Shown here in pieces: positions 50,867 to 57,677 of a stretch of DNA of 64,000 bases. Within the stretch, counting starts at the first letter, position 1, and each line of letters opens with the position of its first letter. The stretch spans positions 151,028-215,027 of IMG/VR virus record IMGVR_UViG_3300046804_003469; one strand, 5' to 3'. Made by a program: the position numbers and the translations under genes. Below the pieces are notes generated by a model. The model made no database searches, was not told the DNA's origin, and worked only from the letters and a program-made list of their open reading frames with translations.

Positions 50867-50948
50867 GGGTAGGTTTCCGAGTGGTTAAAGGAATCTGACT
50901 GTAAATCAGACGGCTCTGCCTTCACTGGTTCAAATCCAGTCCTGCCCA
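50867..50948 (+). tRNA. tRNA-Tyr(GUA)
   Basis: GGGTAGG/CCTGCCC acceptor, TCTGA-CTGTAAA-TCAGA, long variable arm. Confidence 0.95.
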
Positions 50949-50949
50949 C

Positions 50950-50978
50950 TTGACAATCAAATCCTGAACTGGTATGAT
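50950..50978 (+). promoter_or_regulatory. Sigma70-type promoter
   Basis: TTGACA-17 nt-TATGAT with TGn. Confidence 0.75.
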
Positions 50979-51064
50979 TGTTTTATGGGTTTCAGAAGTC
51001 CAAATTCTGAGTAATTCCCACCCCTTCCATGCCTCTCAACGATGCACAAACAGGAAGGTCTCTT

Positions 51065-51138
51065 GGGCTAGTAACTCAGTGGAATAGAGTAACGCTCTTC
51101 TAAAGCGTGAGTCGTTGGTTCGAATCCAACCTAGCCCG
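51065..51138 (+). tRNA. tRNA-Arg(UCU)
   Basis: GGGCTAG/CTAGCCC, ACGCT-CTTCTAA-AGCGT, GTTCGAATC. Confidence 0.95.
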
Positions 51139-51155
51139 TTGTCCTTTTTTCTTTT

Positions 51156-51356
51156 ATGGACAAATACACCTTTGGTGGACAACAACCATCATCCGTTAAT
51201 CTTCTTAGACTCATTAGTGAGTTGGAAGGATCTTATCAAATGCTACACTATATGGCTTTTGAAGAAGATCGTGATATAATAGATGAAATGAAGAAGAGAT
51301 ATTATAAACTCTACTTCAAAACCGTAAAAGAAGAAAAGGCAAACATTCCCTTATAG
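51156..51356 (+). CDS. Small hypothetical protein
   Basis: 66 aa LRLISELEGSYQ...MKKRYYKLYFK. Confidence 0.7.
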   Translation: MDKYTFGGQQPSSVNLLRLISELEGSYQMLHYMAFEEDRDIIDEMKKRYYKLYFKTVKEEKANIPL

Positions 51357-51695
51357 ATTACGAATTTCGTGATGAATTTCTGAATGGCAGTTTGAACATA
51401 CTAGGATACATTTATCTAATTCTTCTTTGACTTTTTCCCAACTTCTAGTATGACCACCTTTAGACAAATAAAAATCTTTTTCTTTTGGATTTAAGTGGTG
51501 AAATTCTAATGCCCAGTGAGAACGATTATAACCACAACATTGACAAGCACCGCCTTTATACGCTATGCTATCTCTTTTAAGGTTCTTTCTTCTCTGGTCT
51601 ACATAATATTTGTTCTTGCATTGTTTAGAGCAAAATTTACCTCTACCATTGTAAATAACTGCTTCTTCTAAACATAAGTGCCAAGCACATTTCAT
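51351..51695 (-). CDS. Free-standing HNH homing endonuclease inserted in tRNA cluster
   Basis: CQCCGY...LEFHHLNP...CILVCSNCHSEIH; N-terminal Cys-rich FCSKQC; only convincing minus-strand gene; TATAAATA on minus strand at 51720-51727. Confidence 0.9.
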   Translation of the reverse strand: MKCAWHLCLEEAVIYNGRGKFCSKQCKNKYYVDQRRKNLKRDSIAYKGGACQCCGYNRSHWALEFHHLNPKEKDFYLSKGGHTRSWEKVKEELDKCILVCSNCHSEIHHEIRNL

Positions 51696-51738
51696 AAGAT
51701 TAACACGAATTGCTAATCTTATTTATAAAGTAAAACAT

Positions 51739-51811
51739 TGGGGTGTAGCTCAGCGGTAGTAGCGGGATGCTGTTAACATCTAGGTCGCAGGTTCGATCCC
51801 TGCCGCCCCAG
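51739..51811 (+). tRNA. tRNA-Asn(GUU)
   Basis: TGGGGTG/CGCCCCA, GGATG-CTGTTAA-CATCT, GTTCGATC; discriminator G. Confidence 0.92.
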
Positions 51812-51892
51812 TCGGAAGATCTGGAAATGTTCGGGTCTTCCTTGCTAAAACCTAGAGTTTTTCTAGGTCAGGGGGATGGCCTCCCCTGTTTC

Positions 51893-51964
51893 GGGAGATT
51901 AACTCAGCGGTAGAGTGGCTGCCTTACAAGCAGTAAGTCATTGGTTCGAATCCGATATTTCCCA
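51893..51964 (+). tRNA. tRNA-Val(UAC)
   Basis: GGGAGAT/ATTTCCC, GCTGC-CTTACAA-GCAGT. Confidence 0.93.
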
Positions 51965-51991
51965 CTTGCATAAATACTTTTAAAAAGTATA

Positions 51992-52435
51992 ATGGAAAAA
52001 CTGTTCAAACTATTAAGTGATGCTCAGGCATCTCTTTTTGTTTTATTTCAAAAAACTTGGATTTATCATTGGGATGTAGTTGGTCCTAATTTTCAACAAC
52101 TACACACTCTTTTTGGTGGACAGTATGAAACTATGTTTGAAGAGATTGATACTCTTACTGAACATATGAGATACTTAGGGATGAAACCTGTAAGTACTCT
52201 TACAAGAATTACTGAGGTGACACAGATTGAGCAGGCATCAAATAGTGCTCAAGATGTTGATGCAATGGAAATGGTTAGACAACTTCGTGATGATAATAAA
52301 AAGATTGTAGAAATTTTTGCAGATATTTCTGAAGAAGCAGATAACCAAAAACAATATGCTACTTCAAATCTTGTTCAAAGTTTAATGGAAACTCATGGTA
52401 AATTCCATTGGATGTTGAGATCTGTATTAGAATAA
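51992..52435 (+). CDS. dps: Dps / ferritin-like DNA protection protein
   Basis: YHWDVVGPNFQQLHTLF...IDTLTEH...HGKFHWML. Confidence 0.92.
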   Translation: MEKLFKLLSDAQASLFVLFQKTWIYHWDVVGPNFQQLHTLFGGQYETMFEEIDTLTEHMRYLGMKPVSTLTRITEVTQIEQASNSAQDVDAMEMVRQLRDDNKKIVEIFADISEEADNQKQYATSNLVQSLMETHGKFHWMLRSVLE

Positions 52436-52449
52436 AATGGTAATGAAAA

Positions 52450-52707
52450 ATGGAAAATGTAAAAATCAGATGTCGTTCCTGTGGAAAAGAACTTGAAGGA
52501 CATTCAACTAAAACTATAACATGTGGTTGTTCAAATATGGCAACTATTCGCGGTGGAGTTATTTCAGCTGTTGACTTATCTAAGATAGTTATGTTAAACT
52601 CTATAAATACAAAACAAAAATCTAGTGTTTTAACAAACGAAGATATTGCTTGGCAAGAAGCAAGGCGTCAACGTAAGGTAAAACGTTTAGATTTTGAAGT
52701 CCGTTGA
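52450..52707 (+). CDS. Zn-binding hypothetical protein
   Basis: CRSCG...CGCSN; C-terminal RKVKRLDFEVR. Confidence 0.75.
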   Translation: MENVKIRCRSCGKELEGHSTKTITCGCSNMATIRGGVISAVDLSKIVMLNSINTKQKSSVLTNEDIAWQEARRQRKVKRLDFEVR

Positions 52708-52717
52708 GGACTTTTTT

Positions 52718-52801
52718 GGAAAGGTGACCGAGTGGTTTAAGGTAACAGTCTTGAAAACTGTCGTGTTAGTAGCACCGTGGGTTCGAATCCCACCCTTTCC
52801 G
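52718..52801 (+). tRNA. tRNA-Ser(UGA)
   Basis: GGAAAGG/CCTTTCC, ACAGT-CTTGAAA-ACTGT, long variable arm, discriminator G. Confidence 0.95.
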
Positions 52802-52914
52802 TTTAGAAATATTACAAAATTTAAGAATGTCTTAATGAGTGTGTCGTAATGAACACATAGTTGACGAAGTAGAAGTACTCACTATCATAACTAGTAGTAC
52901 GCATCTAAAAACCT

Positions 52915-53064
52915 ATGGATCAACATACCTACGATAATTGGGTAAAGATCAAGGAGACATTCGAAAAGTCTGGTAATACGGACAATATGTTTTACAAAAG
53001 AGCATGTGAAATAGTTAAAACTAAAAGAGATCCTCTGGCAAAATTTTTCGGAGATGAGCAGTGA
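52915..53064 (+). CDS. Small hypothetical protein
   Basis: Unannotated 49-aa ORF MDQHTYDNWVKIKETFEKSGNTDNMFYKRA...; TTGACG-16-TATCAT promoter at 52861. Confidence 0.75.
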   Translation: MDQHTYDNWVKIKETFEKSGNTDNMFYKRACEIVKTKRDPLAKFFGDEQ

Positions 53065-53267
53065 TGCAACCATATGACGATGATTATGCGACACATTCTG
53101 AAGTTCAGGAGATGATTGATGCAGCAATACGACGACACAACCGTAATGCTTCTATCATTAGTATGTGCGTCGGTTGGGTGGTTCTTGCTTTATTTGCTGA
53201 GGGACTTTTGAGATTAATTGGAGTCATTCCACCTCTACTTCCATGGTTAAAAATCACACTAAATTAA
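53064..53267 (+). CDS. Small membrane protein
   Basis: HNRNASIISMCVGWVVLALFAEGLLRLIGVIPP; TGATG coupling. Confidence 0.7.
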   Translation: MQPYDDDYATHSEVQEMIDAAIRRHNRNASIISMCVGWVVLALFAEGLLRLIGVIPPLLPWLKITLN

Positions 53268-53271
53268 ACTA

Positions 53272-53397
53272 ATGATTAGAACCATATTTACAGCGATCAC
53301 TCTTTTTGGTGCAATTGCACTCTTTATTATTTGGGGATTAAATAACGCATATCCACAAACGGAGTTATTACATGAAGATTTTTTTAGACACGGCTGA
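53272..53397 (+). CDS. Single-TM peptide, NdhQ-like candidate
   Basis: Unannotated 41-aa ORF MIRTIFTAITLFGAIALFIIWGLNNAYPQ... overlapping talC start. Confidence 0.55.
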   Translation: MIRTIFTAITLFGAIALFIIWGLNNAYPQTELLHEDFFRHG

Positions 53398-54040
53398 CGT
53401 TTCTTTTATTCAACCAGCGTATGAGACAGGGTTAATTGATGGAGTCACTACGAACCCATCACTCATTCTCAAAAGCGGTAGACAACTTCTAGAAGTCATT
53501 AGAGAACTTGCTAAGTTTGAAAACTTACAAAGTATCTCTGCAGAAGTTGTTGCAGATACTGCAGAAGAAATGCTCACAGAAGCACAAAAGTATTATTCAA
53601 TTGCACCTGCAGTTACCATCAAGGTTCCATGCACGGTAGAAGGTCTTAAGGCTTGTAAGTTTCTAACTAATGTTGGTGTTCAAGTCAATGTCACATTAGT
53701 ATTCTCAGTGGCACAAGCAATCCTTGCGTCCAAAGCGGGAGCAACATTCATCTCTCCTTTCGTAGGAAGATGGATGGATAATTCGATTGATGGTGTGGAG
53801 ATCATCAGAAACATCCGTCAGGCATTTGATTACTCAAGAACAAAAACTCAGATCCTTGCTGCATCTATTCGTGATGTCAGACAGGTAGAACAGGCTGCAC
53901 TCAATGGTGCAGATGTGGTTACAATTCCACCAGTCGTTTTTTGGGGAATGTATAAGAATATTCTGACCGATAGGGGAATTGAATTGTTTCAAAAAGATTG
54001 GGAGGAAGTGCTTAGGGGTATTAATGATGAAAAAGTTTAA
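53372..54040 (+). CDS. talC: Transaldolase (TalC type)
   Basis: IFLDTAD, GVTTNPSL, IKVP, NVTLVFS, SPFVGR, LAASIR. Confidence 0.97.
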   Translation: MKIFLDTADVSFIQPAYETGLIDGVTTNPSLILKSGRQLLEVIRELAKFENLQSISAEVVADTAEEMLTEAQKYYSIAPAVTIKVPCTVEGLKACKFLTNVGVQVNVTLVFSVAQAILASKAGATFISPFVGRWMDNSIDGVEIIRNIRQAFDYSRTKTQILAASIRDVRQVEQAALNGADVVTIPPVVFWGMYKNILTDRGIELFQKDWEEVLRGINDEKV

Positions 54041-54527
54041 TGATATTGTTTTATTAATTACAGTATCAATTATTGATTTTCTTTATGAAAATTATCCAAT
54101 ACAAAGATTTTGGATTTTGGAAACAATTGCCAGAGCACCTTATTTTTCATTTTTAAGTGTTCTTCATTTGAGAGAATCATTAGGATTGCGTGGAGAAGAC
54201 CACTTATATCTTATGAAAGAACACTTTTCTCAGACTTTAAATGAAACTGAACATCTGGAATATATGGAAAGCATCGGTGGTGCTGATCGTTGGATTGATC
54301 GTTTATTTGCTTGGCACTTGGTTTTGGTCTATTACTGGATTATGGTTGGTTACTATCTCATTAATCCTGTGGATGCTTATCATTTAAATGCTGGTATTGA
54401 ACTACATGCAACTGAAACTTACCTTGATTATCTTTGGGACCATCCTGAGGATCAAAAGATTTCTGAGATTGCTGTAGATGAAATGAATCATTATATTGAA
54501 CTTACAAGAGCGATGGAGTTGATATGA
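54024..54527 (+). CDS. ptox: Plastoquinol terminal oxidase
   Basis: RFWILETIARAPYF, NETEHL, ELHATETY, DEMNH di-iron motifs. Confidence 0.93.
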   Translation: MMKKFNDIVLLITVSIIDFLYENYPIQRFWILETIARAPYFSFLSVLHLRESLGLRGEDHLYLMKEHFSQTLNETEHLEYMESIGGADRWIDRLFAWHLVLVYYWIMVGYYLINPVDAYHLNAGIELHATETYLDYLWDHPEDQKISEIAVDEMNHYIELTRAMELI

Positions 54528-55855
54528 AAGTGTTAGTTATATTTGGTGCGACAGGCGACCTATGCCGTAAAAAATTGATACCAGCACTCTATACTCTTCA
54601 TAAGAAAGGTCTTTTACCAAAAGGTCTGAAGATTATAGGTGCCTCTAGAACTCAACATACTAAGGAGAGTTGGGTTGAAGTTCTTGGCAGTTATTCCCAA
54701 GAGTTTATCAAGAGACTTGAATATGTTCCTTGTGACTTGAGTGATGCAGAGTCTCTTAAATCATTAGAATCCTCTGAAGATATGACTTATTTTCTTTCTG
54801 TACCACCAGAAAGATATGCCGATGCCGTTACAAATCTAAAAGAAGCAGGTAAGTTAGATGACGCAGAAAAATCTAGAGTCATTATTGAGAAACCTTTTGG
54901 CACCGATCTTCAATCTGCTAATTATTTACAATCTGTGGTTTCTGGATATCTACGCGAGAAACAAGTATATCGCATTGACCATTATCTCGGTAAAGATACT
55001 GTTAATAATATCCTTGCCACCCGCTTTAGCAATATACTTCTGGAGCCACTCTGGAACAGGAACTTCATAGAAGAAGTTCAGATCTTTGCAACTGAAACAA
55101 TCGGTTGTGAAGGTCGTGCTCAGTATTATGATACTGCTGGTGCTGTGAGAGATATGTTACAGAACCATATGCTTCAGGTGCTTGCTCTGATTGCAATGGA
55201 ACCACCTTGTAAGAATGATGCGAGGGAAATCCGTAGAGAGAAGGTTAAGGTTCTTGCTGCGACAAGACTTGGTGATAATGTAGTTCTTGGGCAATATGAT
55301 GGATACAAGAACGAGGATGGTGTAAAACCAGAATCACAGACACCAACCTTTGTTGCTGGTGAATTGTATGTTGATAATTGGAGATGGAAAGGTGTTCCTT
55401 TTTACTTTATGACTGGTAAGAAAATGCCTGTCAATTGTGTAGAAGTTGTGATTAAATTTAAGTCACCACCACAACAACTTTTTGATGGTCATGAGTGTAA
55501 TGACCGAATAGTAATGAGATTGCAACCAGATCCCCATCTGGATATGCGTATTGATATTAAGTCGCCTGGACTCAATGATATGGTAGAACCAGCACTTCTT
55601 CAGTATCATTATCCAGTAGAGAAAGCGATTGATGGTTATGTAAAACTCTTTTATGATGCAATCAATGAAGACCAGTCACACTTCGTCCACGCAGATGAAG
55701 TGTTGGAGTCCTGGAGAATTGTTGATGACCTCCTTTGTACTGGAGATTCTTGCCGTATTATGACGATGCCATATCTTTATAATGAAGGTATTTGGGGACC
55801 ACTAACTAAAACAGAACTTATTACAAAGTGGGACTATCCACTTAAACTCAAGTAG
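54524..55855 (+). CDS. zwf: Glucose-6-phosphate dehydrogenase
   Basis: GATGDL, EKPFG, RIDHYLGK, RDMLQNH, RWKGVPF. Confidence 0.98.
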   Translation: MKVLVIFGATGDLCRKKLIPALYTLHKKGLLPKGLKIIGASRTQHTKESWVEVLGSYSQEFIKRLEYVPCDLSDAESLKSLESSEDMTYFLSVPPERYADAVTNLKEAGKLDDAEKSRVIIEKPFGTDLQSANYLQSVVSGYLREKQVYRIDHYLGKDTVNNILATRFSNILLEPLWNRNFIEEVQIFATETIGCEGRAQYYDTAGAVRDMLQNHMLQVLALIAMEPPCKNDAREIRREKVKVLAATRLGDNVVLGQYDGYKNEDGVKPESQTPTFVAGELYVDNWRWKGVPFYFMTGKKMPVNCVEVVIKFKSPPQQLFDGHECNDRIVMRLQPDPHLDMRIDIKSPGLNDMVEPALLQYHYPVEKAIDGYVKLFYDAINEDQSHFVHADEVLESWRIVDDLLCTGDSCRIMTMPYLYNEGIWGPLTKTELITKWDYPLKLK

Positions 55856-55865
55856 GAGAGAAGAA

Positions 55866-56900
55866 ATGAAAGTAGGACTAATCGGACTGGGAAGAATGGG
55901 AGAAGGAATGTCTCGCCGTATGATGAAATCTGGAATCGAGGTCTGGGGTTATCGAAGGAGTTATGAAAAAGCAAATGAAGCATTTGAAAAAGGATATGTT
56001 AATGGAATTACAACTGATATTGAAAATCTTGTTAGAGTAGTTAAACAAAATAAAAATGGTGGAACGCAACCAGGAATTTTCCAAATGGTTGTTCCAGCAG
56101 AAACAGTAGAGGAGACAATCAATGAGTTACTACGATATTGTGGTGAAGGAGATATTATTATTGATCATGGCAATAGCAATTTTAAGGACAGTCGGAAAAG
56201 AGCAGAACGCCTGGCAAAACTTGGTATCCAATATATTGATTGTGGCACTAGCGGTGGTGTCTACGGTTTGGATCGTGGATACTGTCTTATGGTTGGTGGC
56301 GGAGATACTGCAGTCGCCACTTGTTCGCGCATTTTTAATGCCCTCGCTCCAGGAATTGACGCTGCCCCGAGGACTCAGTTTGACTCAGACATAACCTCTG
56401 CAGAGTATGGATGGTTGCATTGCGGTGGTCCTGGTGCTGGTCACTTTGTAAAGATGGTTCACAATGGAATCGAATATGGTATCATGCAGGCATACGCTGA
56501 AGGATTCAATATCATCAAGAATGCTAACAACGGAGCACAGTATGTCAGAGAAGGAGACGCAGAGGTTGCCCCTATGGCAGATCCAGAATCTTACTGCTAT
56601 GATATTGATGTTGCTGAGGTTGCTGAGTTATGGCGTCGTGGTAGCGTTGTTGGTTCTTGGTTACTTGATCTTACTGCTGATGTGCTTCGGGGCAATCGTG
56701 AGCTTAAACAATTCTCTGGTGGGGTATCAGACAGTGGTGAGGGTCGTTGGACTGTTTCTGCCGCTGTGGATTTGGGGATTCCCGCTCCTGTCATTACTAC
56801 TGCCTTATTTGAAAGATTTAACTCACGTAATCTTGGATCATTCGGAGCAAGAATTCTGAATGGTATGCGTTATATGTTCGGAGGACATCACGTAAGATAA
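55866..56900 (+). CDS. gnd: 6-phosphogluconate dehydrogenase (short form)
   Basis: GLGRMG, GHFVKMVHNGIEY, SGEGRWT, MRYMFGGH. Confidence 0.98.
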   Translation: MKVGLIGLGRMGEGMSRRMMKSGIEVWGYRRSYEKANEAFEKGYVNGITTDIENLVRVVKQNKNGGTQPGIFQMVVPAETVEETINELLRYCGEGDIIIDHGNSNFKDSRKRAERLAKLGIQYIDCGTSGGVYGLDRGYCLMVGGGDTAVATCSRIFNALAPGIDAAPRTQFDSDITSAEYGWLHCGGPGAGHFVKMVHNGIEYGIMQAYAEGFNIIKNANNGAQYVREGDAEVAPMADPESYCYDIDVAEVAELWRRGSVVGSWLLDLTADVLRGNRELKQFSGGVSDSGEGRWTVSAAVDLGIPAPVITTALFERFNSRNLGSFGARILNGMRYMFGGHHVR

Positions 56901-56904
56901 AAAA

Positions 56905-57048
56905 ATGGAATTTGTTTTTAGGTTTGTAGAATTTGTGCTAAATAATCCCACATCACTTTTTATAATTGGTGTGGGGTTGACAGTCGTTCCCACAATGGGT
57001 ATAATGTATGTACATTCAATAAAAGATGAGAAAAACAACGGGGCGTAG
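56905..57048 (+). CDS. Small membrane peptide whose stop codon lies inside tRNA-Pro
   Basis: Unannotated 47-aa ORF MEFVFRFVEFVLNNPTSLFIIGVGLTVVPTMGIMYVH...GA*. Confidence 0.6.
   Translation: MEFVFRFVEFVLNNPTSLFIIGVGLTVVPTMGIMYVHSIKDEKNNGA
56977..57005 (+). promoter_or_regulatory. Perfect-consensus sigma70 promoter for tRNA-Pro block
   Basis: TTGACA-17 nt-TATAAT. Confidence 0.85.
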
Positions 57049-57110
57049 TTCAGCGGTAGAATGCTGGTTTTGGGAACCAGAGGTCACAGGTTCGATCCCT
57101 GTCGCCCCGA
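57039..57110 (+). tRNA. tRNA-Pro(UGG)
   Basis: CGGGGCG/CGCCCCG, CTGGT-TTTGGGA-ACCAG. Confidence 0.95.
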
Positions 57111-57126
57111 CTCATAAAATCACTTT

Positions 57127-57360
57127 ATGAAAATGAATCAAGAAATCGAAAAACTTCCATCCTTTACAATTGAAGAGTTTCAGGCAGACTTTGACAATCT
57201 TATGGAAAGAGTAGAAAACGGAGAAACACTACTCATTAAAAGTCAACATGGTAATGCATTAATGGTTCCTTACAAAGAAGTGGTTAGTATATGTAACGAA
57301 GCAACTATAGATTTTGATGAAATAGTTAAAATCCATACAGACCACGAAGAAGGTTCTTGA
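57127..57360 (+). CDS. Phd/YefM antitoxin-like protein
   Basis: FTIEEFQADFDNLMERVENGETLLIK...ALMVPY pattern. Confidence 0.6.
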   Translation: MKMNQEIEKLPSFTIEEFQADFDNLMERVENGETLLIKSQHGNALMVPYKEVVSICNEATIDFDEIVKIHTDHEEGS

Positions 57361-57399
57361 CGAAGCGTTCCAGATCCGCTACTATAGATCTGGTCTTAA

Positions 57400-57471
57400 G
57401 GGACTGTCGCCTATTGGTTAAGGCCCACTGCTTATAACGGTGTGAAGAGAGTTCAATTCTCTCCAGTCCTA
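57400..57471 (+). tRNA. tRNA-Ile(UAU)
   Basis: GGGACTG/CAGTCCT, CACTG-CTTATAA-CGGTG, GAGAG-TTCAATT-CTCTC. Confidence 0.85.
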
Positions 57472-57603
57472 TTGGTAGTCCTTAGCGATTAACTAAGTAG
57501 ACGCCAACTTCTACTACGGGTATCTTCCGTAGCGTCGTATGGGGATGGTTTGGCAGGGTCTTAAGGACTTTGCCTTCTGGGTGAAGTCCGATCATCCCCA
57601 CCT
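57472..57603 (+). ncRNA. Candidate structured RNA(s) between tRNA-Ile and tRNA(CAU)
   Basis: Three GC-rich folded domains, last a 3-way junction closed by TGGGGATGGTT/GATCATCCCCA. Confidence 0.5.
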
Positions 57604-57676
57604 GCTCCTTTAGCTATCTGGTGAAAGCAATCGACTCATAATCGATCTCAGGTGGGTTCGATCCCCTCAAGGAGCA
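57604..57676 (+). tRNA. tRNA with CAU anticodon (elongator Met or Ile2)
   Basis: GCTCCTT/AAGGAGC, ATCGA-CTCATAA-TCGAT; G1:C72 and no GGG/CCC anticodon stem, so not initiator. Confidence 0.88.
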
Positions 57677-57677
57677 C

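What the first reader, a model, noticed from the sequence alone, without database searches (positions are those of the whole stretch)
53272..53397. Unannotated NdhQ-like membrane peptide at the head of the talC-PTOX-zwf-gnd block
Seen: a 41-aa ORF missed by the track, TM segment TAITLFGAIALFIIWGLNNAYP, overlapping the talC start. From memory, the cyanobacterial NDH-1L subunit NdhQ ends in a helix like SAVLILGFIAGLIWWALHTAYA, which aligns without gaps (A, G, IA, I, W, L, AY shared); the N-terminal soluble part of NdhQ is absent here. Inference: a phage mimic or competitor of an NDH-1 small subunit, which with PTOX and oxidative pentose phosphate genes would form a coherent electron-flow rewiring module. 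The match is short and hydrophobic, so it could be chance.
Basis: inference. Interest (0 to 1): 0.65.

Follow-up and report, generated by a model that had tools for sequence, protein, structure and literature searches.

The report
Phage-encoded truncated NdhQ subunit gene
A tiny gene in this freshwater cyanophage is a shortened copy of the host's NdhQ, a one-helix subunit that holds the photosynthetic NDH-1L complex together, so phages seem to carry NdhQ as well as the already known NdhP.

Summary
The 41-codon ORF at 53272..53397 (+) is real and overlaps the talC start by 26 nt. Its first 29 codons belong to a conserved cyanomyovirus peptide family. The family has a fixed start, one transmembrane helix, the ending F-[IV]-x-W-G-L-[NHT]-[NH]-A-Y-P-Q, and dN/dS 0.25.

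The link to NdhQ is not chance.
- A family profile hits only T. elongatus NdhQ and PetM in the whole PDB, and those hits are weak.
- Picocyanobacterial genomes encode a 38-40 aa NdhQ that keeps the canonical SDSP motif and ends in FI-x-WGLTNAYP. This bridges phage and canonical forms.
- hhalign gives phage vs picocyanobacterial NdhQ E 7.6e-14 and phage vs canonical NdhQ E 9.5e-9. Shuffled controls never came close.
- The phage profile's best six-frame hit in whole host genomes is ndhQ (E 1.5e-8).

The phage form lacks the cytoplasmic N-terminal segment.

Two features are specific to this window. The family's TAG stop reads ACG, which adds 12 residues. No Shine-Dalgarno sequence precedes the ATG.

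In relatives the gene follows orf49-orf68 and precedes a variable talC/PTOX/zwf/gnd/ndhP cassette.

Function is inferred: it probably occupies the NdhQ site on NdhD1 to keep NDH-1L assembled. Translation and binding are untested. I found no paper reporting a phage ndhQ.

The parts
53272..53358 (+). Conserved 29-codon core of the phage ndhQ-like gene: Met, a short basic N-terminus, one transmembrane helix, and the C-terminal motif F-I-I-W-G-L-N-N-A-Y-P-Q.
   Evidence: family alignment A2; hhalign with controls; best hit in host genomes is ndhQ; dN/dS 0.25.
53359..53361 (+). ACG codon at the position where all eight aligned relatives have the family's stop codon (TAG in seven, TAA in L040). In those with TAG it forms part of the talC ribosome-binding site TAGGAG. 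Its loss here causes read-through.
   Evidence: DNA alignment A8. Contigs of co-occurring relatives diverge after 53358 with TGA... (table 7). Identical 296-nt contigs confirm ACG (table 8).
53359..53397 (+). Window-specific 12-codon C-terminal extension (TELLHEDFFRHG) plus TGA stop. It overlaps the talC start, and by the positive-inside rule would lie on the lumenal side.
   Evidence: In relatives the tails after A-Y-P are 0-6 residues.
53061..53267 (+). orf68: a conserved 68-aa cyanophage protein with a C-terminal hydrophobic helix (phrog_1096). It is the nearly constant upstream neighbour. Its TAA stop lies 4 nt before the ndhQ-like ATG, and no Shine-Dalgarno sequence lies between them, so translational coupling is plausible.
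   Evidence: phrog_1096 E 9e-38; upstream neighbour in 65 of 67 non-identical loci; relatives have GAGGA/GGAGG before the ATG; the window does not.
52915..53064 (+). orf49: a conserved 49-aa protein that always precedes orf68. A weak sigma-70-like site lies at 52861..52888, just after tRNA-Ser.
53372..54040 (+). talC transaldolase, first gene of the variable metabolic cassette downstream.
   Evidence: PF00923 E 2.3e-55.
54024..54527 (+). PTOX (plastoquinol terminal oxidase, AOX family). The start is approximate (first internal Met of the ORF 53979..54527).
   Evidence: (PF01786 E 1.2e-13).
54524..55855 (+). zwf (glucose-6-phosphate dehydrogenase).
   Evidence: homologues labelled zwf in relatives.
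55866..56900 (+). gnd (6-phosphogluconate dehydrogenase).
56905..57048 (+). orf47: a second conserved single-helix phage peptide that closes the cassette. In phages without the cassette it directly follows the ndhQ-like gene. It is not NdhP, and its function is unknown.

Best explanation
The ORF is a phage copy of ndhQ, the gene for the roughly 45-aa single-helix subunit Q of the cyanobacterial NDH-1L complex. The phage version keeps the transmembrane helix and the lumen-side W-G-L-x-x-A-Y-P end in the form found in picocyanobacteria (the Synechococcus/Cyanobium type). It has lost the cytoplasmic N-terminal segment. Shown here: homology, conservation under purifying selection, and gene context. 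Established by others: NdhQ and NdhP sandwich NdhD1, contact NdhF1, lipids and a beta-carotene, and keep the NdhD1/NdhF1 module attached to NDH-1M; loss of either dissociates about half of NDH-1L (PMC6992706, PMC7021789, PMC11794437). Inferred: during infection the peptide inserts into the thylakoid membrane with its N-terminus in the cytoplasm and occupies the NdhQ site on host NdhD1. This would keep NDH-1L assembled, and with it cyclic and respiratory electron flow into plastoquinone with proton pumping for ATP, while host protein synthesis declines. On this view it works alongside phage NdhP (in relatives), PTOX as the plastoquinol outlet, and talC/zwf/gnd as the source of reductant. In this phage the gene is probably translated by coupling to orf68, and it carries a 12-residue lumenal tail because its stop codon mutated.
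For: (1) Family: 147 IMG/VR stretches (80 loci kept) and 75 GenBank cyanophage records (no other phages, even at E<=10) encode the peptide. 39 unique variants share a fixed start, a Shine-Dalgarno sequence and a stop. dN/dS is 0.25. (2) The phage profile against all PDB chains hits only NdhQ (E 0.15-0.26), with PetM next at 0.83. (3) A canonical NdhQ profile searched in 301 Cyanobacteriota genomes found, in small genomes, ORFs with ..SDSP..FI-x-WGLT[NH]AYP. That form occurs in 135 of 201 genomes of that order, with one strong copy each. Its profile hits PDB NdhQ at E 4.5e-7. (4) hhalign: phage vs picocyanobacterial NdhQ 98.1%, E 7.6e-14; phage vs canonical NdhQ 95.7%, E 9.5e-9; picocyanobacterial vs canonical 97.9%, E 3.3e-13. 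Shuffled and reversed controls scored at most 19.6 against real scores of 36.5 and 55. (5) The phage profile against whole host genomes in six frames gives ndhQ as top hit: E 1.5e-8 to 4e-7 in the four picocyanobacterial genomes, about 2.5e-6 in five further genomes, and still the top hit in Thermosynechococcus (E 0.14). (6) BLASTP of the window peptide against one host NdhQ gives 14/27 identities, E 5e-10. (7) Context: genuine ndhP and PTOX lie in the same cassette in relatives. (8) Predicted complex with host NdhD1: weak support, ipSAE 0.33 (median of 3 runs) against 0.00 for the best of 3 controls, runs agreeing in at least 73% of contacts, partner pLDDT at least 65. In the tool's calibration the mark was reached by 58 of 80 solved complexes and 2 of 110 mismatched pairs, but scores of 0.60 or below by only 7 of those 80 solved complexes and by both passing mismatches. 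A solved NdhQ-NdhD1 complex exists, so this may reflect likeness only.
Against: There is no evidence of translation or of membrane or complex association. RNA-library contigs covered only the orf68 and talC parts, not the peptide. The cytoplasmic RGIMKF-x-GADSP segment that defines canonical NdhQ is absent, so binding could be weaker or different. This copy lacks a Shine-Dalgarno sequence, has lost its stop codon, and its genome has no ndhP, which could mean decay. The direct phage-to-T. elongatus NdhQ match is not significant on its own (E 0.14-0.26); the case rests on the picocyanobacterial bridge and on profile-profile scores over 25-27 columns. Some marine-type genomes carry a second NdhQ-like paralogue of unknown role that the phage profile scores almost equally (28 vs 29 bits). 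The complex prediction gives only weak support.
Confidence: 0.6

Rival explanations
1. Dominant-negative or remodelling variant. The truncated phage NdhQ displaces host NdhQ but, lacking the cytoplasmic segment, weakens or alters the NdhD1/NdhF1 attachment. That would down-tune or re-purpose NDH-1L rather than maintain it.
For: The N-terminal segment conserved in all 25 canonical NdhQ sequences, and partly in the host form (SDSP), is missing from every phage copy. The consistent truncation to 29 aa suggests selection for a different property.
Against: The most conserved and most constrained part is exactly the part shared with the host (dN/dS 0.10). Host NdhQ in picocyanobacteria is itself already shortened. 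Relatives carry a full-length, highly conserved ndhP beside it, which fits support of the complex better than sabotage. Cyanophage auxiliary genes with known roles mostly replace host subunits (established knowledge, for example psbA).
Confidence: 0.17
2. In this particular phage the gene is a decaying remnant. It is homologous to ndhQ but no longer expressed or functional, and the ORF survives by chance.
For: The Shine-Dalgarno sequence present in relatives is absent. The stop codon is lost (TAG to ACG), giving the longest tail seen in the family. The 37-aa acidic ORF that usually precedes it is deleted, and the genome has no ndhP.
Against: All 29 core codons are intact, with every invariant residue (F18, W21, G22, A26, Y27), and are 76-79% identical to the closest relatives. 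The ATG lies 4 nt after the orf68 stop, a typical coupling arrangement. Tails of 1-6 residues are tolerated elsewhere in the family. The talC GGAG site is preserved despite the change.
Confidence: 0.15
3. The peptide is an unrelated phage membrane protein (for example a holin-like or regulatory peptide), or it mimics another one-helix subunit such as PetM or PetN. On this view the NdhQ resemblance is a by-product of hydrophobic composition.
For: The match is short. PetM scores E 0.83 with the phage profile. An Mnh/antiporter-F model scores E 0.005-0.018. Pfam and PHROGs give nothing.
Against: Column-shuffled and reversed NdhQ profiles never exceed 19.6 against 36.5 and 55 for the real ones. 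The best genome-wide hit in hosts is ndhQ at E 1.5e-8. The PetM match stops before the A-Y-P motif and needs a gap. The antiporter hit is 15 bits against a 136-bit cut-off. Another phage one-helix family hits no small subunit.
Confidence: 0.04

Closest known systems
NdhQ, subunit Q of cyanobacterial NDH-1L (T. elongatus, PDB 6KHI/6L7O/6NBY/6HUM chain Q; Synechocystis Norf6)
   Same: One transmembrane helix followed at once by the W-x-L-x-x-A-Y end, with a small G-x-I-[GA] patch in the helix. There is significant profile similarity, and it is the reciprocal best match in genomes.
   Different: 29 aa (41 here) instead of 45-47. It lacks the R-G-I-M-K-F-x-G-A-D-S-P cytoplasmic segment. It has W-G-L-N-N-A-Y-P-Q instead of W-W-A-L-[HQ]-x-A-Y. 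It is encoded by a virus.
Picocyanobacterial NdhQ form (38-40 aa; alignment A6, found in 135 of 201 genomes of the order)
   Same: F-I-x-W-G-L-[TN]-N-A-Y-P is almost letter for letter the phage motif (10 of 11 residues with one host). The helix length is the same. This is the likely donor lineage.
   Different: The host keeps about 10 extra N-terminal residues including S-D-S-P. The phage ORF begins within one residue of the host's conserved internal Met.
Phage-encoded NdhP (reported in P-TIM68 and S-SCSM2R; PMC12801897)
   Same: It is another one-helix, NDH-1L-specific subunit that binds NdhD1, is carried by cyanomyoviruses in the same cassette near PTOX/zwf/gnd, and is often unannotated.
   Different: It is a different protein family, and phage NdhP is full length. 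It is present in 370 GenBank phage records (E<=1e-3) against 75 for the ndhQ-like gene (E<=10). It is absent from this phage.
Other cyanophage copies of small thylakoid subunits and electron carriers (psbA/psbD, hli, petE, petF, PTOX)
   Same: These are host-derived genes thought to sustain or redirect photosynthetic electron flow during infection.
   Different: Those are larger and well annotated. This one falls below most gene-callers' length limits and is unannotated under the match in the ACG-2014e/h/i/j, S-CAM4 and S-SCSM2R records listed.

Membership tests
NdhQ (NDH-1L subunit Q) | Significant sequence or profile similarity to established NdhQ | tested here: met
   hhalign phage vs canonical: 95.7%, E 9.5e-9, with shuffle controls at most 18.7 against 36.5. 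The bridge via host NdhQ gives E 7.6e-14 and 3.3e-13. The direct HMM hit to PDB NdhQ is only E 0.15-0.26.
NdhQ (NDH-1L subunit Q) | Single transmembrane helix ending in W-x-L-x-x-A-Y close to the C-terminus | tested here: met
   W21, A26 and Y27 are invariant and L23 is present in at least 90% of 33 phage sequences. I15, W21, L23, A26 and Y27 are invariant across phage, host and canonical sequences. In this window the motif is followed by 14 further residues (P28, Q29 and the 12-residue tail) rather than 2.
NdhQ (NDH-1L subunit Q) | Cytoplasmic N-terminal segment R-G-I-M-K-F-x-G-A-D-S-P | tested here: not met
   It is absent from all phage copies. It is reduced to S-D-S-P in picocyanobacterial NdhQ. 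It is invariant or nearly so in 25 canonical sequences.
NdhQ (NDH-1L subunit Q) | Length about 45 aa | tested here: not met
   The family norm is 29 aa and this window has 41 aa, but through a non-homologous C-terminal tail.
NdhQ (NDH-1L subunit Q) | Physical subunit of NDH-1L, contacting NdhD1/NdhF1 | tested here: inconclusive
   The predicted complex with host NdhD1 (L162, an NdhD1 orthologue at E 1.5e-249) gives weak support: 0.33 against 0.00 for the best control. The tool's caveats are that low-score passes are more often wrong than right unless the guess was likely beforehand, and that the score may reflect memory of solved complexes. No biochemical data exist.
NdhQ (NDH-1L subunit Q) | Needed for NDH-1L stability | not testable with these tools
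   This requires complementation of an ndhQ deletion mutant or a phage gene knockout.
Cyanophage auxiliary metabolic gene (host-derived) | Closest cellular relative lies in the host lineage, and the gene sits in a phage genome among other host-like metabolic genes | tested here: met
   The best six-frame hit in picocyanobacterial genomes is ndhQ. The gene is flanked by talC, PTOX, zwf and gnd, and by ndhP in relatives. The window is part of a 215-kb virus record that CheckV estimates to be 100% complete.
PetM (cytochrome b6f subunit 7) | Profile similarity over the helix and its flanks | tested here: not met
   E 0.83. The alignment covers only 18-20 residues with a gap and ends before the A-Y-P motif.

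The most novel reading that the evidence does not exclude
Cyanomyoviruses carry a matched pair of NDH-1L-specific clamp peptides: a full-length NdhP and an N-terminally trimmed NdhQ. Together these would lock the shared NDH-1M core onto NdhD1/NdhF1. That would pull the core away from the CO2-uptake forms (NDH-1MS), so that one small-peptide switch both raises cyclic and respiratory ATP supply and helps shut down carbon fixation during infection. The trimmed N-terminus would be an adaptation for fast insertion, or for out-competing host NdhQ.
Probability: 0.15. Interest if true: 0.8.

Novelty: new member of a known kind. Interest (0 to 1): 0.62.

Why it matters
Phage genes copied from the host's photosynthetic machinery show which steps limit phage production. 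NDH-1 subunits in phages have so far been reported as ndhP, ndhI and ndhD; I found no paper that reports a phage ndhQ. NdhQ and NdhP are the two peptides that clamp the NdhD1/NdhF1 module onto the NDH-1 core. Finding both in cyanomyoviruses, next to PTOX and the pentose-phosphate genes, points to NDH-1L stability as a target of infection. That would mean cyclic or respiratory electron flow and ATP supply are being protected or redirected, and it gives a directly testable hypothesis. The gene is present in freshwater and marine phages yet is unannotated or labelled 'hypothetical' because it has only 29 codons. This is a reminder that auxiliary-gene catalogues miss very small proteins. As a by-product, the work defines the shortened NdhQ form of picocyanobacteria and shows that phage ndhP is far more common (370 GenBank records) than recently stated.

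Tried and rejected
- Pfam, NCBIfam and PHROGs scans of the peptide gave nothing meaningful. The only NCBIfam hit, an antiporter subunit F model, scored 15 bits against a 136-bit cut-off.
- Megablast and blastn of the region showed that DNA similarity to known phages stops at the end of orf68 and resumes in talC, so nucleotide searches miss the gene.
- A scan of 185,579 species genomes for the strict phage motif F[IV][INQ]WGL[NH][NH]A found no relative. The host form differs by one or two residues and was found only through the NdhQ profile.
- I tested whether orf47 (56905..57048) is NdhP and rejected it. The NdhP annotated in S-SCSM2R is a different protein, and orf47 has no PDB or family match.
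- I recalled PetN and PetM as alternative models from memory. PetN gave no hit and PetM a weak partial one.
- For expression, two metatranscriptome runs held contigs only over the orf68 and talC parts, none over the peptide. Contigs cannot show absence, so the result is uninformative.
- The homologous-protein search returned only unnamed 29-57 aa metagenomic peptides of the same family plus one host-like 38-aa sequence, with no named relatives.
I rebuilt the alignment without them, as the tool instructs.
- The paper by Nowaczyk et al. 2011 (PMC3040284) is not held, so what it says about distribution could not be checked.
- With only 29 residues, no tree was attempted. The phage family scores about equally against the main host ndhQ and against a second host paralogue where one exists, so the exact donor gene is unresolved.

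Full report
**What is at the coordinates.**

The window belongs to a 215,027-bp virus record (CheckV completeness 100%) from a freshwater metagenome. Its gene content and nearest relatives place it among T4-like cyanomyoviruses (Kyanoviridae). The closest GenBank relatives are Synechococcus phages S-SRM01 and DSL-LC03.

An ATG-started ORF runs from 53272 to 53397 on the + strand and encodes 41 aa. It begins 4 nt after the TAA stop of a 68-aa ORF (53061..53267; phrog_1096, E 9e-38). It overlaps the first 26 nt of talC (53372..54040). Downstream follow PTOX, zwf, gnd and a 47-aa hydrophobic ORF.

**It is a real, conserved gene, but of 29 codons.**

- tblastn found weak matches in 75 GenBank phage records. 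All were Synechococcus phages or cyanophages, even at E<=10 among 50,697 phage records.
- A pattern-plus-tblastn scan of IMG/VR confirmed 147 stretches, of which 80 loci were kept.
- Reading the ORFs gave 39 unique peptides besides the window's. Nearly all are 29 aa. The ATG sits exactly 20 codons before an invariant Trp, a GAGGA/GGAGG site lies 6-10 nt upstream, and most end in F-[IV]-x-W-G-L-[NHT]-[NH]-A-Y-P-Q followed by a stop.
- Among 40 unique 87-nt genes, entropy at codon positions 1, 2 and 3 is 0.68, 0.48 and 1.11.
- Pairwise dN/dS is 0.25 overall. It is 0.49 for codons 2-17 and 0.10 for codons 18-29.
- The other two sense frames are closed in 39 and 40 of the 40 genes.
- A search of 5.8 billion predicted proteins returned only unnamed or 'hypothetical' peptides of this family, 29-57 aa long, plus one host-like 38-aa sequence.

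**What is peculiar to this window.**

A DNA alignment with eight relatives shows the family stop codon immediately after ...TAT CCA CAA (TAG in seven, TAA in one). Where it is TAG, it doubles as part of the talC ribosome-binding site (TAGGAG), about 10 nt before the talC ATG.

The window reads ACG GAG at that point. The frame therefore runs on for 12 codons (TELLHEDFFRHG) to a TGA inside talC. This explains the 'overlap with talC'.

Elsewhere in the family, tails after A-Y-P are 0-6 residues long.

The window copy also lacks the Shine-Dalgarno sequence of its relatives. It lacks the 37-aa acidic ORF that usually separates it from orf68.

Logan contigs from two runs of one freshwater sample, possibly the source sample, match 53187..53482 without a difference. 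Contigs of co-occurring relatives match up to 53358 and then continue with TGA.... The read-through allele is therefore real, and relatives with the normal stop exist in the same sample.

**Is it NdhQ? Direct test.**

A profile of the phage family was searched against all 177,635 distinct PDB chain sequences.

| Profile | Hits at E<=10 |
|---|---|
| First alignment, 4 sequences | Two T. elongatus NdhQ sequences only (6khi_Q and 6l7o_Q): E 0.15 and 0.41 |
| 33-sequence alignment A2 | The same two (E 0.26 and 0.76) plus PetM (E 0.83) |

The NdhQ alignment is gap-free and ends one residue before the NdhQ C-terminus. On its own this is suggestive but not significant.

**Is it NdhQ? The bridge.**

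I recovered canonical ndhQ genes from cyanobacterial genomes and searched their profile in 301 Cyanobacteriota genomes.

- 117 genomes had a match. Most were at E 1e-19 to 1e-30.
- A few small genomes (2.4-2.7 Mb) matched at only E 1e-7 to 4e-4.
- Those weak hits are ORFs of the type M-x-N-G-G-S-D-S-P-M-x-V-L-I-S-G-I-L-L-L-G-G-I-G-A-F-I-x-W-G-L-T-N-A-Y-P-x-x.

These ORFs keep the canonical A/S-D-S-P motif and end in the phage motif.

- A profile of this form finds one strong copy in 135 of 201 genomes of that order. The genomes listed without a match were mostly 1.6-1.7 Mb.
- Searched against PDB, its top hit is NdhQ at E 4.5e-7 over 35 columns.

The small genomes therefore have a shortened NdhQ.

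Profile-profile comparisons:

| Comparison | Probability | E-value | Score |
|---|---|---|---|
| Phage vs picocyanobacterial NdhQ | 98.1% | 7.6e-14 | 55.0 |
| Phage vs canonical NdhQ | 95.7% | 9.5e-9 | 36.5 |
| Picocyanobacterial vs canonical NdhQ | 97.9% | 3.3e-13 | 56.7 |

Controls were run against both the canonical and the picocyanobacterial NdhQ profiles.

- With 200 random column permutations of each target, scores were 8.8-8.9 +/- 2.4-2.5, with a maximum of 19.6.
- No control reached 90% probability.
- Reversed profiles scored 11.

Further tests of specificity:

- The phage profile was searched in six frames through whole genomes. The ndhQ locus was the top hit in all four picocyanobacterial genomes (E 1.5e-8 to 4e-7) and in five more (about 2.5e-6). 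It was the top hit even in Thermosynechococcus (E 0.14).
- BLASTP of the window peptide against one host NdhQ gives 14 of 27 identities at E 5e-10.
- A joint alignment shows I15, W21, L23, A26 and Y27 invariant from phage to T. elongatus.
- As a negative control, the profile of another phage one-helix family (orf47) hits no small thylakoid subunit.

I conclude that the peptide is a homologue of NdhQ. It was most likely captured from a picocyanobacterial host and has lost its first ten or so codons. The phage start lies within one residue of the host's conserved internal Met.

**Context.**

In 67 non-identical IMG/VR loci the nearest recognisable upstream gene is orf68 in 65.

| Next gene downstream | Loci |
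|---|---|
| talC | 30 |
| orf47 | 15 |
| PTOX | 6 |
| zwf | 2 |
| gnd | 1 |
| other, or none within 400 nt | 12 |
| contig ends | 1 |

The ndhQ-like gene therefore marks the upstream edge of a variable cassette inserted between it and orf47. It is not tied to talC.

That cassette contains a genuine ndhP in 17 of the fetched loci (11 of the 67 non-identical ones). The match to 6khi_P is E 1.7e-9.

In GenBank, phage ndhP occurs in 370 records, mostly labelled hypothetical and next to zwf, gnd or PTOX.

- In S-CAM9 the order is PTOX, ndhP, two small ORFs, ndhQ-like, orf47-like.
- In ACG-2014f, ndhP and the ndhQ-like gene are about 200 nt apart.
- In ACG-2014e the gene follows petE by one gene and abuts the orf47 homologue.
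- In S-SCSM2R it sits unannotated just before TalC.

The window's own genome has one copy of the ndhQ-like gene and no ndhP.

**How it probably works.**

The following is established knowledge. NdhQ and NdhP are single helices that sandwich NdhD1 at the distal membrane arm of NDH-1L. They contact NdhF1, lipids and a beta-carotene. They stabilise the attachment of the NdhD1/NdhF1 module to the NDH-1M core. Deleting either disassembles about half of NDH-1L, and the double deletion almost all of it. [quoted passage not shown]

The following is inference. The phage peptide has a short basic N-terminus and the aromatic W-G-L-N-N-A-Y-P end. It would insert with its N-terminus in the cytoplasm and take the Q position on NdhD1. 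This would keep NDH-1L intact while host synthesis is shut off. Reductant from the phage-boosted pentose-phosphate pathway, and from PSI through ferredoxin, could then keep entering the plastoquinone pool with proton pumping, with PTOX as the overflow.

A predicted complex of the window peptide with the NdhD1 orthologue of a host-type genome gave weak support. The NdhD1 is L162, which matches 6hum_D at E 1.5e-249.

- ipSAE was 0.33 (median of three runs) against 0.00 for the best of three controls.
- The runs agreed in at least 73% of contacts.
- Partner pLDDT was at least 65.
- In the tool's calibration the mark was reached by 58 of 80 solved complexes and 2 of 110 mismatched pairs.
- Passes at or below 0.60 came from only 7 of those 80 solved complexes and from both of the passing mismatches.
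- A similar complex is already solved, so the score may reflect likeness only.

Whether the missing cytoplasmic segment makes the phage form a weaker binder, an equal one or a competitor is open. For this window it is also open whether the copy without a Shine-Dalgarno sequence and with a 12-residue lumenal tail still works. RNA-library contigs did not cover the ORF, so expression is untested.

**Comparison with what is known, and novelty.**

Phage ndhP, ndhI and ndhD have been described (PMC10452541, PMC12801897, PMC6596454). Of 28 papers in the library that mention NdhQ, the only one also ranked for phage or virus terms cites it solely in a reference title. I found no report of a phage ndhQ.

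The finding is therefore a new member of a known kind: a host-derived auxiliary gene for a small photosynthetic-complex subunit. It fails two formal NdhQ features, length and the N-terminal motif. I file it as a truncated NdhQ homologue rather than a canonical NdhQ.

**Scores.**

- Confidence that it is an NdhQ homologue: about 0.9.
- Confidence in the full mechanism (binds the Q site and stabilises NDH-1L): about 0.6.
- Interest: 0.62.

Noticed in passing
window 56905..57048 (+); homologues e.g. L003:2575-2730, L044:2013-2126: orf47 is a second conserved cyanophage single-helix peptide (motif ..N-[NS]-P..G.G L.[IV].P..G I..[IV]H). In phages lacking the metabolic cassette it directly follows the ndhQ-like gene, sometimes with an ATGA overlap. 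It has no Pfam, NCBIfam or PDB match, and it is not NdhP.
   Followed up: partly
GenBank phages; L168:2771-2899, L169:2767-2898; IMG/VR loci such as L035:3462-3581: Genuine ndhP (6khi_P E 1.7e-9) occurs in 370 phage records. It is mostly annotated as hypothetical, or lies under mis-extended 'dehydrogenase' calls, beside zwf, gnd or PTOX. That is far more common than the recent statement that it is rare in cyanophages. It is absent from this window's genome.
   Followed up: partly
L170:165-299 and L171:101-229 (picocyanobacterial genomes G337, G314): Some 2.1-2.9 Mb picocyanobacterial genomes carry a second NdhQ-like paralogue of 42-44 aa (ending ..VIWGLLNAYPNLL or ..ICWGVMSAYPAL) in addition to the main ndhQ. 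The phage profile scores it almost as high as the main copy (28 vs 29 bits). Its role is unknown.
   Followed up: partly
genomes searched: The picocyanobacterial NdhQ profile found no match in 66 of 201 genomes of the order. The 20 that the tool listed were mostly 1.6-1.7 Mb, a size typical of streamlined Prochlorococcus. Either ndhQ is lost there or it has diverged beyond detection.
   Followed up: no
window 53061..53267 (+): orf68 (phrog_1096) is 76-98% identical across relatives and has a C-terminal hydrophobic helix. Its only Pfam hint is a sub-threshold match to the N-terminal domain of OpcA, the G6PDH assembly protein (E 0.14). This is curious given zwf nearby, but it may be chance.
   Followed up: no
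relatives, e.g. L001:2395-2508, L002:2395-2508: A 37-aa strongly acidic ORF (..EELFEEPSTYEDE..DD) lies between orf68 and the ndhQ-like gene in many relatives and overlaps its start. It is deleted in the window.
   Followed up: no
window 50867..57677: Eight tRNA genes (Tyr, Arg, Asn, Val, Ser, Pro, Ile, Met) are interleaved with the small ORFs and metabolic genes. tRNA-Ser ends about 110 nt before orf49.
   Followed up: no
window 51992..52435 (+): A Dps/ferritin-like gene (PF00210 E 2.4e-22) lies upstream and is followed by an 85-aa Cys-rich ORF (52450..52707). Both are conserved upstream of orf49-orf68 in most relatives.
   Followed up: no
L001:2574-2774, L002:2580-2765, L003:2295-2498, L169:2780-3100: A 61-106 aa ORF family with the motif F-A-M-S-[SC]-F-[VA]-R-x-Y-G moves around the ndhQ-like gene. 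It lies after the gene in freshwater phages, and before it or between ndhP and it in marine phages. Its function is unknown.
   Followed up: no
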